Below the pieces are notes generated by a model. The model was not told the DNA's origin, searched no databases, and saw only the letters and a program-made list of their open reading frames with translations. A stretch of 39,531 nt of DNA from Octopus bimaculoides (taxonomy: Eukaryota), in the NCBI RefSeq assembly GCF_001194135.2, contig NC_068999.1:24597065-24636595 (forward strand). Direction: 5' to 3'. Of this stretch, positions 438 through 33,392 are shown one piece after another. Positions within the stretch are counted from its first letter, which is position 1, and each line of letters begins with the position of its first letter. Made by a program: the position numbers and the translations under genes.

Positions 438-613
438 GACAACCGATGTTGGTGTGCTTACTTCCCCGTAACTTATTGATTCGGCAAAAGAGACCGATAG
501 AATAAGTACTAGGCTTACAAAGAATAGGTCCTGGGGTCGATTCGTTCGACTAAAAGCGGTGTTCCAGCATGGCCACAGTCAAATGACTGAAACAGGTAAA
601 AGAATAAAAAAAG
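438..613 (+). mobile_element. SINE 3' module (family B) with AAAAGA-type tail
   Basis: ACAACCGATG...GAATAAGTACTAGGC...GGGGTCGAT...CAGCATGGCCACAGTCAAATGACTGAAACA motif, repeated about 10 times in the window. Confidence 0.85.
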
Positions 614-5933: not shown

Positions 5934-6182
5934 NNNNNNNNNNNNNNNNNNNNNNNNNNNNNNNNNNNNNNNNNNNNNNNNNNNNNNNNNNNNNNNNNNN
6001 NCCCACCATCGCTTGACAACCGATGCTGGTGTGTTTACGTCCCTGTAACGTAGCGGTTCGGCAAAATAGACCGATAGAATAAGTACTAGGCTTACAAAAA
6101 AGAAGTCCTGGGGTCGATTTGCTCGACTAAAGGCGGTGCTCCAGCATGGCCACAGTCAAATGACTGAAACAAGTAAAAGAGT
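5718..6182 (+). mobile_element. Full composite SINE: tRNA head + CORE-like + (TA/TG)n + family B module + tail (contains an N-gap)
   Basis: GGCGCAGGAGTGGCTGTGTGGTAAG head, then microsatellite, gap 5934-6001, and the B module ending GAAACAAGTAAAAGAG. Confidence 0.85.
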
Positions 6183-8924: not shown

Positions 8925-9174
8925 TACTCTTTTACTCTTTTACTTGTTTCAGTCATTTGACTGTGGCCATGCTGGAGCACCGCCTTTAGTCGAGCAAATC
9001 GACCCCAGGACTTATTCTTTGGATGCCTAGTACTTATTCTATCGGTCTCTTTTGCCGAACCGCTAAGTTACGGGGACGTAAACACACCAGCATCGGTTGT
9101 CAAGCGATGTTGGGGGGACAAACACAGATACACAAACATATACACACACATACACAAACATATACACACACATA
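8925..9174 (-). mobile_element. SINE family B module truncating the Penelope fragment
   Basis: TACTCTTTTACTCTTTTACTTGTTTCAGTCATTTGACTGTGGCCATGCTGG..., a near-consensus copy that runs into an N-gap. Confidence 0.9.
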
Positions 9175-10699: not shown

Positions 10700-10915
10700 T
10701 TGTCTGTGTTTGTCTCTCACTACCGCTTGACAACCGGCGGTGGTGTGTTTACGTCCCTGTAACTTAGCGGTTCGGCAAAAGAGACCGATAGAATAAGTAC
10801 TAGGCTTTAAAAAAATAAGTCCTAGAGTCGATTTGTTCGACTAAAACCGTTGAAGGCTGTGTTCCAGCATGGCCGCAGTCAAACAACTGAAACAAGTAAA
10901 AGATAAAAGATATAA
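10700..10915 (+). mobile_element. SINE family B module
   Basis: TGTCTGTGTTTGTC...CGCTTGACAACCGG...CAGCATGGCCGCAGTC...GAAACAAGTAAAAGA. Confidence 0.85.
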
Positions 10916-14142: not shown

Positions 14143-14352
14143 TGTTTGACCCCCACCACTGCTTGACAACCGGTTTTTGTGCTTTTACATCCTCGTCAGT
14201 TTGCGGTTCAGCAAAATAGACCGATAAAATAAGTACCCGGCTTAAAAAGAAAATAGGTGCTGGGGTCGATTAGTTCGACTAGAATTCCTTAAGGTGGTGC
14301 CGAAGCATGGCCGCAATCTAATGACTGAAACAAGTAAAAGAATAAAAGAAAG
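14143..14352 (+). mobile_element. SINE family B module
   Basis: CACTGCTTGACAACCGG...GGGGTCGATTAGTTCGACT...GCATGGCCGCAATCTAATGACTGAAACAAGTAAAAG. Confidence 0.8.
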
Positions 14353-16960: not shown

Positions 16961-17066
<106 letters not shown>

Positions 17067-17086
17067 CACACACACACACACACATA

Positions 17087-18357
17087 CACAAAGGGCGATG
17101 GGTAAATTGTCGTCTAAATTATGCAAAAATGAAAATAACACTGATATCGCATTTTAACAGATATATTTACCAAAATTATATTAAAATATCTTGAGATACT
17201 AAAGAGTAAATTTATTCAATAAAATCGCCATTGGCTTCAACCACGGCCTCCAGACGACTTTGGAATCTCCTGCAACTCTTCTGGTTTAAGTTGGTGAATG
17301 CTGCTATAATCATTGCCTTCAATTCATCTTTGGTGTTACAAGGAGTTTTGTTGGTCCCTCGCTCAATTGCACCCCACACATAATATTCAAGGGGGTTGCA
17401 GTCTGGAGAGTTAGGTGGCCAGATGTTAGGGGTAATGTGGTCGCAGAAATTGTCTGACAGCCATTCCTGGGTTCTCTTGTTTGTGTGGCATGGCGCAGAG
17501 TCCTGTTGCCAGACATAGGGTCTTCTAGTAGCCACTCTCTTCATCCAGGGCAGCACTACCTCCAGGCACTTGATGTAGGCCTCCGTGTTGAGTTTGAGGC
17601 CGTGTGAGAAGATGATTGGAAGCATAACGTCGCCATCTCTAGTGATAGCTCCAAGCACCGTGATGTTGAGTGAATGTTTGATTTTTATCACTTTCGGTAC
17701 ATGTTTTGGGGGCACGGCAAGCAAGCGGTTGTTCTGTGTGTTCACCATCTGATGTCGCCTGAGAAAAATCAAAGCATGTTCGGTTGGAGGGGATGCTTGA
17801 GTTTGTTCAAAAGCTTTGTAGCGCAGTCTTTCCTCTTGTCCTTGATGGATTGGGATAAAAAGTGTCCCTTTCTCATCTTGTATGAGAAATACCGAATGTT
17901 TTCATGCAGCTTGATAACGAACTAAGATACTCCTATGTCCCTGGCGATGGACCTGATTGACTGGGAGGTATCATTGTCAATCATGGCCTGGATCTCACCC
18001 AAAAAATTCAGTTCTTTTCTTATCAGAATGATCAGAGTGAGTTTTCCGAGCTGCCATACCTTCGTAATCACCATTGGACTCATCCAACTCTTTTCGAATC
18101 CTCTGCACCGTCGTCAGATTGACAACCAAACACTCTGAAATGTTTGTATTGGAGCATCCGGCTCGAATGCCAAGCAGTACAACATGTAGTTTCCAAATTT
18201 CTAACAGAGTGAATTGCGTTATGATGCTGTTTTTTTCTCACAGAGAGTGCTCAACTCACCCTACTATACTGTGTAGTCGACGAAATCAGAAACAAACAAT
18301 GCGCATAAACGAAATTAAAAATATGAAGTGGCGACAATTTACCCATCGCACCCAGTG
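17087..18357 (-). mobile_element. Tc1/mariner DD37-class (maT-like) transposon, full length but dead
   Basis: Perfect 18-bp TIR core GCGATGGGTAAATTGTCG (17095-17112 / 18332-18349). Both ends abut TA-containing microsatellite sequence. Confidence 0.9.
17212..18222 (-). pseudogene. DD37(D/E) mariner transposase pseudogene
   Basis: WQQDSAPCH...WPPNSPDCNPLEYYVWG with 37 residues between D and E. Upstream frames give HTH-like SNTNISECLVVNLTTVQRIRK and SIRSIARDIGVS. The first catalytic D (FSDE) is deleted and stop codons are present. Confidence 0.9.
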
Positions 18358-18746: not shown

Positions 18747-19162
18747 ATATATATACATCACTAAAGTGAACAAGGGCATTGATCAGCACGAGTATTGCTA
18801 GAAATAAGAAAACACAACTCAATGGCCAACAAAAACACTATCTTAATGAGCTGACAAGGGAGACAAGCTCCTTATGGTTGCAGATACAGCCAGATCATCG
18901 ATGATTTCTTGTTCTGATGCTTAATGCATCTTAACACTCATCAGTGGCTCTCACCGCGCCTAGGGTTAAAATCAGCTCACCTTGTTAGCTTATAAGATTT
19001 CCGTTCAGATCATACGCTGATTTCAAAAACGGTAAAAGACAAAATTATAAATATTATGGAAATATTATGGGTGGCTAAGTCACAATTTTACAACCTAAAC
19101 GCAAAATATATACGTCACTAAGGTGAATAAGGGTACAAATTAACACTAGTGTTGCTAGAAAT
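18747..19162 (-). mobile_element. Hammerhead-containing non-coding element (retrozyme/pLTR-like), copy 1
   Basis: 357-bp period (ATTGCTAGAAAT at 18794 and GTTGCTAGAAAT at 19151), ~60-bp terminal direct repeats, and colinear homology to 32982-33392. Confidence 0.8.
18880..18958 (-). ncRNA. Type I hammerhead ribozyme with intact core
   Basis: AGCCA-CUGAUGA (18944-18938)-stem II (GUGUU-AA-GAUGC-AUUAA-GCAUC-AG-AACAA)-GAAA (18908-18905)-UCAUCGAUGA-UC, cleavage between 18893 and 18892, then UGGCU. Confidence 0.85.
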
Positions 19163-19610
19163 CAGAGTCCTCTGATTAAGATAGTGCTTTTGTTGACTAT
19201 TGACTTGTTTTGATGCTTATTTCTAGCAATACTGGTGTGCTGATTAGTGTCCTTGAGAGAGAGAGAGGGAGAGAGAGAGAGAGAGAGNNNNNNNNNNNNN
19301 NNNNNNNNNNNNNNNNNNNNNNNNNNNNNNNNNNNNNNNNNNNNNNNNNNNNNNNNNNNNNNNNNNNNNNNNNNNNNNNNNNNNNNNNNNNNNNNNNNNN
19401 NNNNNNNNNNNNNNNNNNNNNNNNNNNNNNNNNNNNNNNNNNNNNNNNNNNNNNNNNNNNNNNNNNNNNNNNNNNNNNNNNNNNNNNNNNNNNNNNNNNN
19501 NNNNNNNNNNNNNNNNNNNNNNNNNNNNNNNNNNNNNNNNNNNNNNNNNNNNNNNNNNNNNNNNNNNNNNNNNNNNNNNNNNNNNNNNNNNNNNNNNNNN
19601 NNNNNNNNNN

Positions 19611-21194: not shown

Positions 21195-21403
21195 CCACCC
21201 CCACCCACTACCGCTTGACAATCGGTATCGGTGTGTTAACGTCCCCGTAACTTAGCGGTTCAGCAAGTCTGACCGACAGAATGAGTACCAGGCTTAAAAA
21301 ACAAATAAGTACTGGGGTCGATTCATTCGATTAAAAATTCTTCAAGGCGGTGCCCCAGCATGGCTGAAGTTTCACAACTGAAACAAGTAAAAGGCAAAAG
21401 AAA
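21195..21403 (+). mobile_element. SINE family B module
   Basis: CTACCGCTTGACAATCGG...ACTGGGGTCGATTCATTCGA...GAAACAAGTAAAAG. Confidence 0.85.
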
Positions 21404-29640: not shown

Positions 29641-30846
29641 ACCTTGGTCTACCAGAGAAAATGTATGTCACTAATTACCAACTGGGTCCAATGGACCCAA
29701 TAATATTCTGTTAATTAAATTTTATTGAAACTATCACTATTTCTTAGCTACATTATATATACTATCACTTATATCAGTCATGTTGTAGAATATAACCATA
29801 GGCCACCTTCGAGTCATTCTTTTGCAAGTGTATGTCTTTACCGTCTTATCTAGAATAACTACTCCTTTTGTTTTGTTGTAACATGTAATAACTTCAGGTT
29901 TATTTTCAGCACTTTTTAAATCAGTTGAAGGCTGAGAGTGCATTGTACTCATCAGTGTAACAACATAATTTTTCTTGGGACAATAAGATAGGATCATAGC
30001 ATCATAGAATCCTTTTTTCCATTTGTGAGAGCACTTGGAAGTTCAACTCTGTTCTTTCTAATTGTTCCAACTAAAGTAATTTTCTTGCTAAGCAGTTTTT
30101 AAGCCAATCTTAGACTTGCAAAAAAAAAAAAAAAAAGTATCACAAGTTATATTGCGACCAGTATTTTCAAGTTCTCTTACTAGGTCTCCAACAACTCTTG
30201 GACCTTGATTTGTCTCTCTCTCTTTTACTGGGTCTTTTCCAGTGTAGATTTGCATTTTACAGACATAAGATGTTTCACTGTTGCATATTGCTCAAACTGT
30301 AATCCCATATTTCCCTGGTTTTAAAGGAATATATACCCGGAATGGGCAGTGCCCTCTGAATGAAACTAATTGTTCATCAACTGTCACGCATGAACTTGGA
30401 ACATATCCATCTTGCAAATTCTGATTCCACATTTCAAATACTTCTCTTGTGGGCTCCAATTTATCATTACTTCTCTCTTTTTTTTTTCTTCTTGCACTAA
30501 CATCATCAAAACGCAATACTTGTAAAATCTGTTGAAATCTTCCCTGGCTCATAATTTTGTTGAATATTGGGCGGCCATCTTCTTGACTCCATAACTGTGT
30601 GACATTTTCATGTTTAGATTTATGAACATCCATAAGAATAATCAGTCCAATAAATTTCTTTAGTTCAGAGTGATCCATTTCCTTCTATTTATCTTTGTGA
30701 ACAACCTGACCATCAACATTTGTCCATTTATGAATTACTTCAAGAAGATTCTGGTACATAGTAAAACATGTTTCAATGCTATCACAAGACCTTTTAGCAA
30801 AACAGGATGGTTCACATTCTTGGTGCACAATATTGCAAGATGAAGT
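29641..30846 (-). mobile_element. piggyBac transposon remnant (3' terminus retained, 5' part lost in N-gap)
   Basis: TTAA at 29637-29640 followed by ACCTTGG, and subterminal palindrome TGGGTCCA-A-TGGACCCA (29683-29699). Transposase motifs TVDEQLVSFRG.CPFRVYIP.KPGKYG, RNITCD.FF and YNKTKG.V.ILD. Confidence 0.9.
29737..30846 (-). pseudogene. piggyBac (PGBD4-like) transposase pseudogene
   Basis: Stop codons, a poly-T frameshift at the DNFFT motif (~30119-30136), and the third catalytic D changed to V. Confidence 0.9.
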
Positions 30847-31543: not shown

Positions 31544-31584
<41 letters not shown>

Positions 31585-31601
31585 CATACATACATACATA
31601 A

Positions 31602-31642
<41 letters not shown>

Positions 31643-31648
31643 CAGACA

Positions 31649-32864
31649 CACAAACACGACAGAAGTAAATAGGAACCCTTATAATCATTAACATTTCTTT
31701 AAATCTGAAATTATACATTCAAATTATTTATCAATTATCATAATGTGAATATCCAATATTTAGTAGACCTGACCTTTGCATTTTTCAATGCAAGGATCTT
31801 ATAAGGCGTGCTACTGATCAGATGACGAGTATTTTCTTGGGGAATTTCTTACCAAGTTTCATGCAGCAATCTCAAAAGATCTGGCTTTGAGGATGCTTTC
31901 TTGTTCTTTTTATGAATTTTCCTGTCCATTATGCCTCAGAGGTGTTCAATAGGGTTCATATATGGTGACTGGCTTGGCCATGGAAGTTTTTCAATGCCAT
32001 TTTTTACCAACCAATCTTGGGTCTTATAACCGTGTAACAAGGAGCCCCATCTTCCATAAATAGTCTTCTTTAATCATTTCACCATTGGAGAAAATTGAAA
32101 GGAGTCCTTTCTGTAATATGGAGACATATTTATCTGAGTTTATGTTTCAATCGCATTCCACCAGCTCTGATTGACCATTGCTTCAAATTGCTCCCCAGAC
32201 CATCACAGAATACCTGCCTTATTTCATTGTTGGCACCAATCTTTTCATGTCAAATTCTTTATCACAGAGTCTCCAGACCACACTCGACCACTGTCAGAAA
32301 ATACAGCAAACCTGGACTCATCAGATAATGTGGTAGTGTCCCAAAATGCCAGCGGCCACTCCGTCATCTCACTGGCCCAATCTTTTCTCATCTTGATATT
32401 GGCTGGTTGAAGAAATGATTTCCTATTTGCTGCTCTGCCATTGTAGCCAAGTTTGTAGAGATACCTGACAGCTGTACTGCGACTGACATCAACCTGTTTT
32501 GTTATGTCAGAGGCCTTGCAATAAGGTCTTGCAAAAGGTCTTGTCAGAGGGCCCTGGTCGACCTGGCCAAGGTGATGTGGACTCCTTCCCCTCTCTAGTG
32601 AATTGCAGTCATTCTATTAACTGTAAAAAGCAGGATCCCAAGGTTTTCTGCATTTTATGCTAAGTCCACCTTCAGACTGACCCACAAAACAGTCTCTTTG
32701 AAATTTGGACACTTCCAAGGTTTCTTTTGTACGTGGCATGATTAAGCAGTCACATATAGAACCCAAAACACAAAAATGTCCATTAATAAAGAATCTAAAA
32801 CTTTTCAAGTTAAAATAAATATAAAACAATGTTTTATGGGTGTCTATTAACTTCGGTTATGTCA

Positions 32865-32981: not shown

Positions 32982-33392
32982 TATTTCTAGCAGTGCTGGT
33001 ACCTCGTACCACTTTGTGCCCTTGTCACCTTAGTGATGTTTATAAATTTGCTTTTAGGTTTTAATTGCTAATATGCCAGCTACATTATTTATAGTATACA
33101 CTTCTACCGTTTTGAAATAGCACATGCTTTCAATGGTTTTTCTTATAAGTTGACGAGGCGAGTTAAGCTTGACCCTAGGCGCAGTAAGATCCACTGACGA
33201 GAATTGAGATGTTATGCATCAGAATTCAAAATCACGTGATATGGGTATACTGCTTCTTCAGTAGGGAGCTCTGTTTCCTTCGTCAACTTACTAAGTTAGT
33301 GCTGTTTGTGGCTAATGAGTCGTTTTGACTCATATTTCTAGCAATGCCCGTACCACTTTATATCCTTGTCACCTCAGTGACGTTTACATATG
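32982..33392 (+). mobile_element. Hammerhead-containing non-coding element (retrozyme/pLTR-like), copy 2
   Basis: 351-bp period (TATTTCTAGCA at 32982 and 33333), ~60-bp terminal direct repeats, enclosing helix 33146-33158/33278-33290, and homology to 18747-19162 (-). Confidence 0.8.
33181..33253 (+). ncRNA. Type I hammerhead ribozyme with G12-to-A core substitution
   Basis: GCAGUA-AG-AUCCA-CUGACGA (33194-33200)-GAAUU-GA-GAUG-UUAUG-CAUC-AG-AAUUC-AAAA (33228-31)-UCACGUGA-UA, cleavage between 33241 and 33242, then UGGGU-A-UACUGC. Confidence 0.85.

What the first reader, a model, noticed from the sequence alone, without database searches (positions are those of the whole stretch)
18747..19162. 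Retrozyme-like non-coding element with an intact hammerhead (copy 1 of 2)
Seen: a 357-nt unit with ~60-bp terminal direct repeats, no ORF, and an intact CUGAUGA/GAAA/AUC core (only the 10.1-11.1 pair is mismatched). Compared with the copy at 33 kb the helices covary: stem I AGCCA/UGGCU vs AUCCA/UGGGU; stem II UGUU/AACA vs AAUU/AAUU with the same 2x2 internal loop; stem III two different perfect palindromes (UCAUCGAUGA vs UCACGUGA); enclosing helix AGCUAACAAGG/CCUUGUCAGCU vs AGUUGACGAGG/CCUUCGUCAACU. Established: metazoan non-LTR retrozymes are short repeat units of a few hundred nt with type I hammerheads that yield circular RNAs, and PLE pLTRs carry similar motifs. Inference: a ribozyme-bearing, non-autonomous cephalopod retroelement; whether it is undescribed cannot be determined without a search.
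Basis: partly seen in the sequence, partly recalled or inferred. Interest (0 to 1): 0.9.

Follow-up and report, generated by a model that had tools for sequence, protein, structure and literature searches.

The report
Decayed hammerhead retrozyme copies in octopus
Two old, non-coding ~350-base repeat copies in an octopus genome carry a hammerhead self-cleaving RNA motif whose helices were kept by compensating mutations, so they look like worn-out members of the "retrozyme" class of ribozyme-bearing retroelements already known from other animals, including mussels.

Summary
On the minus strand at 18888-18949 there is a type I hammerhead with every core nucleotide present and only the 10.1-11.1 pair mismatched (G.A). 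It lies in a 357-nt non-coding unit with 61-nt terminal direct repeats that are 80% identical. A second copy (32982-33392, plus strand, about 70% identical) keeps all 29 comparable base pairs. Five of those pairs changed on both sides (simulation P about 1e-5). Copy 2 has lost the catalytic G12 (G to A), a point missing from the finding as given to me. Each lesion is private to one copy, so their common ancestor probably had an intact ribozyme.

Both stem III regions are perfect palindromes, and the predicted dimer is a double hammerhead, as in newt, axolotl and Penelope-like-element (PLE) ribozymes. Each locus holds about 1.2 units with a single ribozyme. Copy 1 abuts a head-to-head inverted 5'-truncated copy. 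The 3' ends lie against microsatellites, and no RT ORF is nearby. This architecture is PLE-like.

My reading is decayed monomer insertions of a non-LTR retrozyme-like, probably PLE-mobilised, family in an octopus genome. Rfam does not recognise the motif. I recovered no tandem array and no further full copy. Self-cleavage and circular RNA are untested. It is a new member of a known kind, of modest interest.

The parts
18747..19166 (-). Copy 1 of the element: about 1.17 units (357-nt period) read on the minus strand. Its 3' end (TA-rich) runs into an assembly gap.
19106..19166 (-). Copy 1, 5' terminal direct repeat (a partial upstream unit, pLTR-like).
   Evidence: 61 nt, 80% identical to 18749-18809
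18749..18809 (-). Copy 1, 3' terminal direct repeat.
18888..18949 (-). Copy 1 type I hammerhead motif. Stem I 18945-18949 with 18888-18892. CUGAUGA 18938-18944. Stem II 18909-18937. GAA 18906-18908. Palindromic stem III 18894-18905. C17 at 18893, predicted cut between 18893 and 18892. 11.1 is A, giving a G.A mismatch.
18950..18966 (-). Most conserved block of the family (ACCCUAGGCGCRGURAG), just 5' of stem I. Part of it forms an extension of stem I.
   Evidence: 2 matches in the window, 0.05 expected
18980..18990 (-). Copy 1, 5' strand of the 11-bp helix that encloses the 140-nt hammerhead domain (AGCUAACAAGG).
18849..18859 (-). Copy 1, 3' strand of the enclosing helix (CCUUGUCAGCU).
19167..19255 (+). 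Inverted 5'-truncated copy (the last ~90-107 nt of the unit), head-to-head with the 5' end of copy 1. It ends in a (GA)n microsatellite and then a gap. The junction is a small palindrome, AATCAGAG (19160-19167), TC, CTCTGATT (19170-19177).
   Evidence: I1, I2: 82% and 95% complementary; 82% over 84 nt
32982..33392 (+). Copy 2 of the element: about 1.17 units (about 351-nt period), about 70% identical to copy 1. It is flanked by (TA)n/(TATG)n microsatellite on the 5' side and TA-rich/(TAC)n sequence on the 3' side.
32982..33042 (+). Copy 2, 5' terminal direct repeat.
   Evidence: 77% with gaps; 84% without gaps
33333..33386 (+). Copy 2, 3' terminal direct repeat.
33189..33246 (+). Copy 2 hammerhead-like motif. 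AUCCA-CUGACGA-stem II-C-AAAA-UCACGUGA-UA|UGGGU. G10.1-C11.1 is intact, but core position 12 is A (33228) instead of G.
33148..33158 (+). Copy 2, 5' strand of the enclosing helix (AGUUGACGAGG).
33278..33288 (+). Copy 2, 3' strand of the enclosing helix (CUUCGUCAACU).

Best explanation
These are two old, independently inserted, now damaged copies of one family of short non-coding retroelements that carry a type I hammerhead ribozyme. The family is retrozyme-like, of the metazoan non-LTR kind, in an octopus genome.

Shown here:
- A 350-357-nt AT-rich unit without an ORF.
- A hammerhead three-way junction, plus a stem I extension and an 11-bp closing helix, maintained by compensatory substitutions between two subfamilies.
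- Palindromic stem III sequences that make a double hammerhead the predicted dimer fold, while the single active fold is not the most stable one.
- Each locus holds about 1.2 units in which the repeat runs on into the body, as in a circle or tandem.
- 5'-truncated fragments keep the 3' end of the ribozyme-sense strand.

Inferred from published work on the class (PMC7229834, PMC4209133, PMC8557442):
- Source loci are tandem arrays, transcribed into oligomers.
- A host RtcB-type ligase circularises them. The weak single hammerhead keeps the circle from re-cutting.
- A reverse transcriptase supplied in trans, most likely from a Penelope-like element, copies the circle or oligomer from a TA-rich 3' site primed at nicked microsatellite DNA.
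- Running past one turn gives the 60-nt terminal redundancy. Template switching gives the inverted truncated copy.

The two copies in this window have one ribozyme each and one lesion each (11.1 C to A in copy 1, G12 to A in copy 2). They are most likely inert descendants rather than sources.
For: - Motif and coordinates.
- Homology of the two copies: about 400 nt, 70.6% identical, E = 4e-36.
- Structure conservation: 29 of 29 comparable pairs are standard in copy 2, 5 pairs changed on both sides, and the 3 one-sided changes never break a pair in copy 2 (two of them repair a copy 1 mismatch). Simulation P <= 5e-6 and about 1e-5.
- On the unedited MAFFT alignment, 95% of cells pair against 29-46% with slid partners, with 4 double changes.
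- The lesions are complementary between copies.
- The homodimer minimum-energy fold is a double hammerhead with a 12-bp (copy 1) or 10-bp (copy 2) intermolecular stem III. The monomer hammerhead fold lies 2.6-3.5 kcal/mol above the minimum. This matches the published behaviour of metazoan type I and PLE hammerheads (PMC4209133, PMC7229834).
- GC is 37-39% and the unit is 350-357 nt. The published range is 170-400 nt with low GC, and 350-390 nt in mussel.
- No ORF. No RT or GIY-YIG ORF nearby.
- Partial tandem, head-to-head inverted 5'-truncated copy, microsatellite flanks and assembly breaks match the PLE insertion architecture described in PMC8557442.
- A 5'-truncated 3'-end fragment of the family sits in an Octopus sinensis locus (L006, nhmmer E = 4.9e-7).
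- Octopus genomes hold PLEs.
Against: - Rfam's hammerhead covariance models do not match either copy, even on slices of 96-141 nt at E <= 10.
- Only two full copies and two fragments were available, so the covariation test rests on one pair of sequences and on a structure chosen after seeing them.
- No tandem array, which is the defining organisation of non-LTR retrozymes, was seen. Each locus has a single ribozyme.
- The circular fold of copy 1 is no more stable than shuffles (z about -0.4).
- No copy was found in 41 kb from L001 (O. bimaculoides) and L002 (an unidentified ENA assembly that is not a close relative), and only one fragment in 109 kb of octopus DNA overall.
- Adjacency to microsatellites could be chance in a genome this rich in them (68 TRF rows in 39.5 kb).
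- No expression, cleavage or circularity data exist here.
Confidence: 0.72

Rival explanations
1. These are terminal pieces (pLTR or 3'-end fragments) of an autonomous Penelope-like element, not an independently propagating short element. The hammerhead would then be the PLE's own pLTR ribozyme, and these loci would be heavily 5'-truncated PLE insertions.
For: Partial tandem, inverted 5'-truncated neighbour, microsatellite flanks and assembly breaks are all PLE hallmarks. PLE hammerheads have a long helix II, a short helix I and palindromic helix III positions, as here. A 2026 preprint finds retrozymes to be sister to PLE pLTRs.
Against: Two copies that are 30% diverged have the same ~350-nt period, and in the upstream repeat the sequence runs on into the start of the body. 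The unit therefore closes on itself, which 5' truncation of a 3-kb element would not produce twice. The hammerhead lies outside the duplicated 60 nt, whereas in PLEs it sits inside the pLTR. No RT or GIY-YIG ORF occurs beside copy 2, nor beyond the ~325-base gaps around copy 1.
Confidence: 0.13
2. It is a SINE-like element mobilised by a LINE, as the Schistosoma Sm-alpha repeat was first described, which happens to carry a hammerhead. The TA-rich end would be a LINE-type microsatellite tail and the 5'-truncated fragments ordinary target-primed products.
For: 5'-truncated copies keep the 3' end, and there is simple-repeat sequence at that end. LINEs and SINEs are the most abundant octopus repeats.
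Against: There is no tRNA-, 5S- or 7SL-like head (ARAGORN found none; Rfam found none). The terminal redundancy and the head-to-head inverted copy are not LINE/SINE features.
Confidence: 0.08
3. It is an ordinary repeat in which a hammerhead-like string arose by chance. The RNA has no ribozyme function and the apparent covariation comes from choosing the structure after the fact.
For: A relaxed descriptor hits 2.3% of shuffled windows. Rfam does not recognise the motif. Both copies deviate from the canonical core or its closing pair.
Against: Five double substitutions all preserve pairing, and no pair is lost in copy 2. The palindromic stem III is kept with different sequences. Each core lesion is absent from the other copy. 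The hammerhead part of the structure is dictated by the motif and was not chosen freely.
Confidence: 0.04

Closest known systems
Metazoan non-LTR retrozymes (Cervera and de la Pena 2020, NAR, PMC7229834), in particular the 350-390-nt mussel (Mytilus galloprovincialis) repeats
   Same: Non-coding, AT-rich unit of about 350 nt with one type I hammerhead per unit. The predicted RNA is highly self-paired. The host is a mollusc whose genome also holds PLEs. Monomeric derivatives of such families are reported in other animals.
   Different: No tandem dimer or multimer was seen here, only 1.17-unit copies. The sequence is unrelated as far as I could test. Helix III is longer (3-4 bp plus a tetraloop) and fully palindromic. 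Expression as circular RNA is not shown.
Newt satellite 2 and axolotl retrozyme hammerheads (330-350-nt repeats that cleave as dimers)
   Same: Similar unit size. The single hammerhead is unstable. The palindromic stem III allows a double hammerhead between two units.
   Different: A different phylum and a different sequence. Those are huge tandem arrays, whereas these loci are dispersed single copies.
Minimal hammerheads in the pLTRs of Penelope-like elements (Cervera and de la Pena 2014, PMC4209133; Craig et al. 2021, PMC8557442)
   Same: Long helix II, short helix I (5 bp) without a defined loop 1, and palindromic helix III. The insertion architecture also matches: partial tandem, inverted 5'-truncated copy at the 5' end, and microsatellite targets.
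   Different: No RT/GIY-YIG ORF is attached. Helix III is present rather than minimal. [quoted passage not shown] The ribozyme lies outside the short duplicated segment.
Plant LTR retrozymes (Cervera et al. 2016, PMC4918200)
   Same: Non-autonomous, ribozyme-bearing, and thought to spread through circular RNA.
   Different: The plant elements have type III hammerheads inside ~350-bp LTRs, a PBS, a PPT, 4-bp TSDs and GC above 55%. None of these is present here.

Membership tests
Hammerhead ribozyme, type I | Conserved core: C3 U4 G5 A6 N7 G8 A9, G12 A13 A14, A15.1-U16.1, and H17 not G | tested here: met
   Copy 1 has all of them. Copy 2 fails at position 12 (A for G, at 33228). Parsimony gives an intact ancestor.
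Hammerhead ribozyme, type I | G10.1-C11.1 closing pair of helix II | tested here: inconclusive
   G.A in copy 1 and G-C in copy 2.
Hammerhead ribozyme, type I | Three helices around the core, open at helix I, supported by covariation | tested here: met
   Helix I 5 bp, helix II 4-5 plus 4-5 bp, helix III 3-4 bp. There are 3 double changes within the hammerhead and 2 in the closing helix. Simulation P about 1e-5. Only two sequences were available.
Hammerhead ribozyme, type I | Match to the curated Rfam covariance models (Hammerhead_1 and relatives) | tested here: not met
   No hit at gathering score, nor at E <= 10, on the window or on short slices.
Hammerhead ribozyme, type I | Site-specific self-cleavage | not testable with these tools
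   This needs in vitro transcription of monomer and dimer constructs.
Metazoan non-LTR retrozyme | Unit of about 170-400 nt, low GC, no ORF, no LTR/PBS/PPT | tested here: met
   350-357 nt, GC 37-39%, longest open stretch 44 aa. PBS and PPT were not looked for specifically.
Metazoan non-LTR retrozyme | Tandem arrangement (dimer to multimer) with a hammerhead in each unit | tested here: not met
   Both loci hold about 1.17 units and one ribozyme. Copy 1 is bounded by assembly gaps, so a longer array there cannot be excluded. Monomer derivatives are described for the class.
Metazoan non-LTR retrozyme | Expressed as linear and circular RNA of unit length | not testable with these tools
   No transcriptome was reachable. 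The scans of the metagenome, viral and prokaryote collections found nothing.
Metazoan non-LTR retrozyme | Co-occurrence with autonomous PLEs in the host genome | not tested
   From the literature only: PLEs are annotated in Octopus. There is none in this window.
Penelope-like element (autonomous, or a solo pLTR) | RT plus GIY-YIG ORF attached to the repeat | tested here: not met
   Pfam scan of the window's long ORFs and inspection of the flanks show only Tc1/mariner and piggyBac remnants.
Penelope-like element (autonomous, or a solo pLTR) | Partial tandem (pLTR) and an inverted 5'-truncated copy at the 5' end | tested here: met
   Terminal repeats in both copies. The inverted fragment 19167-19255 abuts copy 1, as described in PMC8557442.
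SINE (Pol III, LINE-dependent) | A tRNA-, 5S- or 7SL-derived head with an internal promoter | tested here: not met
   ARAGORN found none. There is no Rfam match.
Plant LTR retrozyme | Type III hammerheads inside long LTRs | tested here: not met
   The topology is type I, and the ribozyme lies outside the 61-nt repeats.

The most novel reading that the evidence does not exclude
Octopus genomes may hold a so far undescribed retrozyme family whose source loci still produce abundant ~350-nt circular RNAs. Its insertions would carry the full Penelope-type signature: partial tandem, head-to-head inverted 5'-truncated copy, and a microsatellite target. That would be direct structural evidence that PLE machinery mobilises retrozymes, a link so far argued from co-occurrence and pLTR phylogeny.
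Probability: 0.3. Interest if true: 0.55.

Novelty: new member of a known kind. Interest (0 to 1): 0.35.

Why it matters
Hammerhead-bearing repeats that give rise to circular RNAs are known from cnidarians, mussels, insects and amphibians. I found no paper reporting them in cephalopods, so this would extend the class to a group whose RNA biology attracts much attention.

The more useful point is anatomical. Copy 1 combines a retrozyme-like unit with the tandem and inverted junctions typical of Penelope-like elements. If that holds genome-wide, it bears on who mobilises animal retrozymes.

For genome annotation, it explains a class of "unknown" or "unclassified SINE" repeats, and some assembly breaks, in octopus genomes.

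Tried and rejected
- Rfam at the gathering score and at permissive E-values found no hammerhead. The many mir-297/mir-466 hits are TG/TA microsatellite artefacts.
- I looked for more copies in several ways:
  - blastn of the units against the window found only the two copies and the inverted fragment.
  - Exact-pattern scans of the metagenome (2), viral (1) and prokaryote (1) collections found nothing.
  - A search of the protein database with a spurious antisense ORF of the element, hoping to catch miscalled ORFs on cephalopod contigs, found nothing.
  - I fetched about 109 kb of O. bimaculoides, O. sinensis and O. vulgaris DNA around transposase homologues. That gave one 5'-truncated fragment.
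- An exact look-up of the window's mariner ORF is not on record.
- The idea that reverse transcription stalls at the base of the structured hammerhead domain was dropped. The four truncation points (about 61, 69, 107 and 123 nt from the 3' end) do not cluster well.
- A Pol III or tRNA-like origin of the terminal repeat has no support.
- Using the divergence of the terminal repeats as an insertion clock is too weak to rely on. Within-copy identity (80% and 84%) is only slightly above between-copy identity (74-79%).
- MAFFT misaligns stem III and the 3' strand of stem I. The full pair count therefore uses a hand alignment. The tool-based count covers only the closing helix and stem II.

Full report
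**What is at the coordinates.** The finding lies in a 541-base island of sequence (18747-19287) between two runs of N of 328 and 323 bases. The window as a whole is a gap-ridden scaffold with 13 N runs. Within the island, 18749-18809 and 19106-19166 are direct repeats of 61 nt, 80% identical, with a spacing of 357. No reading frame stays open for more than 44 codons.

On the minus strand, 18949 to 18888 reads AGCCA CUGAUGA G-UGUU-AA-GAUGC-AUUAA-GCAUC-AG-AACA-A GAAA UCAUCGAUGA UC UGGCU. In standard hammerhead numbering, every core nucleotide is present: C3 to A9, G12 to A14, A15.1-U16.1 and C17. The only deviation is 11.1 = A, opposite G10.1.

**The second copy.** A homologous element lies on the plus strand at about 32982-33392. 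It aligns with copy 1 over about 400 nt at 70.6% identity (E = 4e-36). It has its own pair of terminal repeats (32982-33042 and 33333-33386). Its motif (33189-33246) reads AUCCA CUGACGA G-AAUU-GA-GAUG...CAUC-AG-AAUU-C AAAA UCACGUGA UA UGGGU. Here 10.1-11.1 is a proper G-C pair, and positions 7 (C) and 17 (A) are allowed variants.

Position 12, however, is A instead of G. G12 is the general base of the reaction (PMC6155905), so this copy is very probably inactive. The finding as given to me does not mention this. Each lesion is absent from the other copy, so the simplest inference is that their common ancestor had a canonical core.

**Is it more than chance?** A relaxed hammerhead descriptor finds exactly these two motifs in the window. 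It finds none in about 130 kb of other fetched loci, but it also hits 7 of 300 shuffles of the window. A single motif is therefore weak evidence. None of Rfam's hammerhead models matches, even when slices of 96-141 nt are searched at E <= 10.

The comparison of the two copies settles the matter. I aligned the 150-nt domains by hand, because MAFFT misplaces stem III and the 3' strand of stem I. I then scored 30 pairs: an 11-bp helix enclosing the whole domain, stem I (5), stem II (5 + 5) and stem III (4).

- Five pairs changed on both sides and are all still standard pairs: C-G to U-A and A-U to G-C in the closing helix, G-C to U.G in stem I, and U-A to A-U and G-C to A-U in stem II.
- Three pairs changed on one side. 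Two of these repair a mismatch of copy 1 and one gives G.U.
- No pair is broken in copy 2.

Placing the same 13 substitutions at random leaves 19-20 of 29 pairs standard on average. It reached 29 of 29 in at most 5e-6 of 200,000 runs, and five or more double changes in about 1e-5. On the unedited MAFFT alignment, counting only the closing helix and stem II, 95% of cells pair against 29-46% when partners are slid, with four double changes.

The caveat is that there are only two sequences, and the structure was fixed after seeing both. The hammerhead part of it, though, is dictated by the motif.

**Features of the ribozyme.** Stem III with its closing A-U pair is a perfect palindrome in both copies, with different sequences: AUCAUCGAUGAU (12 nt) and AUCACGUGAU (10 nt). 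As single molecules, the hammerhead fold lies 2.6-3.5 kcal/mol above the minimum-energy fold. In copy 1 the CUGAUGA box pairs with the 5' half of stem III instead. For two molecules, the minimum-energy fold is the classical double hammerhead, with a 12- or 10-bp intermolecular stem III.

This is the behaviour described for most metazoan type I hammerheads, for newt and axolotl repeats, and for hammerheads of Penelope-like elements (PLEs). They cut when two units are together in an oligomeric transcript and are silent in the monomeric circle (PMC4209133; PMC7229834). The long helix II, and the short helix I without a defined loop 1, resemble the PLE variants. The presence of a real helix III resembles the canonical ones.

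Just 5' of stem I lies the best conserved block of the element, ACCCUAGGCGCRGURAG. Part of it extends stem I beyond an internal loop.

**Architecture of the loci.** In both copies the upstream 61-nt repeat runs straight on into the body. The downstream repeat ends the element at a TA-rich stretch. Each locus is therefore about 1.17 turns of a 350-357-nt cycle, with a single ribozyme in the non-duplicated part. One unit has 37-39% GC. As a circle, copy 2 folds significantly better than shuffles (z = -2.5 to -3.5), but copy 1 does not.

Directly against the 5' end of copy 1, on the other strand, lies a further partial copy (19167-19255). It corresponds to the last ~90-107 nt of the unit, which makes it a head-to-head, 5'-truncated inverted copy. 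It is joined through a small palindrome and followed by (GA)n and a gap.

Copy 2 sits between (TA)n/(TATG)n and TA-rich/(TAC)n sequence. The 3' end of copy 1 is (TA)n running into a gap.

In 109 kb fetched from O. bimaculoides, O. sinensis and O. vulgaris, I found one more family member. It is a 5'-truncated fragment that keeps the 3' end, again followed by simple repeats (L006, about 17005-17120; nhmmer E = 4.9e-7). Truncated copies keep the 3' end of the ribozyme-sense strand, so that strand is the likely template for reverse transcription.

**Surroundings and host.** The window's longer ORFs are remnants of Tc1/mariner (17215-17772 and 32248-32613, both minus strand) and piggyBac (29740-30684, minus strand). 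No reverse transcriptase or GIY-YIG endonuclease is present. Named homologues of these transposases come from Octopus species. Short interspersed repeats of the window are 91-93% identical to the fetched octopus loci. The host is therefore an octopus; I did not determine the species.

**Interpretation.** The combination matches the published definition of metazoan non-LTR retrozymes (170-400 nt; 350-390 nt in the mussel; PMC7229834). That combination is a non-coding, AT-rich, ~350-nt unit with a structurally conserved type I hammerhead built to act in pairs, and copies longer than one turn.

A partial tandem, an inverted 5'-truncated copy at the 5' end, a preference for microsatellites and trouble in short-read assemblies are the insertion hallmarks of PLEs (PMC8557442). 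PLEs have been proposed, and recently argued from phylogeny, to be the parents and mobilisers of animal retrozymes.

I therefore read the two loci as old, inert monomer insertions of such a family. Transcription of source arrays, paired self-cleavage, ligation to a circle and reverse transcription by a PLE enzyme are inferred from the class. None of these steps is shown here.

The main rival is that these are terminal fragments of an autonomous PLE. Three things count against it: the same closed 350-nt period recurs in two diverged copies, the ribozyme lies outside the duplicated segment, and no ORF is attached. It cannot be excluded without the octopus PLE consensus sequences. A LINE-dependent SINE and a chance motif are less likely.

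**Known or new.** The kind is well known and was already reported in a mollusc. I found no paper that mentions hammerheads or retrozymes in cephalopods, and the recent octopus repeat annotation does not mention ribozymes. This is best called a new member of a known kind, and it may already sit unclassified in repeat libraries that I could not search.

A specialist would not be surprised. The one point of wider interest is the PLE-type junction on a retrozyme-like unit, seen here only once.

Noticed in passing
window 19160-19177: The junction between copy 1 and the inverted fragment is a short palindrome (AATCAGAG, TC, CTCTGATT). CTCTGATT is shared by both partners, which suggests a template switch at microhomology, or possibly an assembly chimera in this 541-nt contig island.
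   Followed up: partly
window 17098-18356 (minus strand; ORF 17215-17772): A Tc1/mariner transposon remnant with a DDE_3 domain. It is 85% identical at the DNA level to an O. bimaculoides locus, and the best named protein hit is O. bimaculoides (68% identical).
   Followed up: partly
window 29740-30846 (minus strand): A piggyBac transposase remnant (DDE_Tnp_1_7, E = 3.7e-33), broken into at least three frames. It is 82% identical at the protein level to an O. sinensis PGBD4-like protein and 83-91% identical at the DNA level to four octopus loci.
   Followed up: partly
window 31939-32613 (minus strand): A second Tc1-like remnant (an HTH_Tnp_Tc3_2 domain, just under Pfam's cut-off), immediately upstream of copy 2.
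   Followed up: no
window 458-608, 6035-6182, 8931-9081, 10749-10911, 14185-14346, 21239-21401 and others: A ~150-nt interspersed repeat, probably an octopus SINE, is present many times in both orientations. The copies are 73-93% identical to L001:11250-11400 (O. bimaculoides), with similar copies in the O. sinensis and O. vulgaris loci.
   Followed up: no
window 39063-39408: Another repeat family, 87-90% identical to several places in the O. sinensis and O. vulgaris loci (L004, L005, L006).
   Followed up: no
window 31546-31631, 17024-17092, 33985-34053 and many others: Dozens of sub-threshold Rfam hits to mir-297, mir-466, mir-3149 and similar families all lie on (TG)n/(TA)n microsatellites. 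They are low-complexity artefacts, not microRNA genes.
   Followed up: yes
L006 about 17005-17120 (Octopus sinensis CM016866.1): A 5'-truncated 3'-end fragment of the same element family, next to a mariner-like remnant and followed by (TC)n/(TA)n-like sequence. It shows that the family is present in O. sinensis.
   Followed up: partly
whole window: There are 13 runs of N and 68 tandem-repeat rows in 39.5 kb. This is a short-read scaffold of a microsatellite-rich, transposon-rich region without an evident host gene.
   Followed up: no
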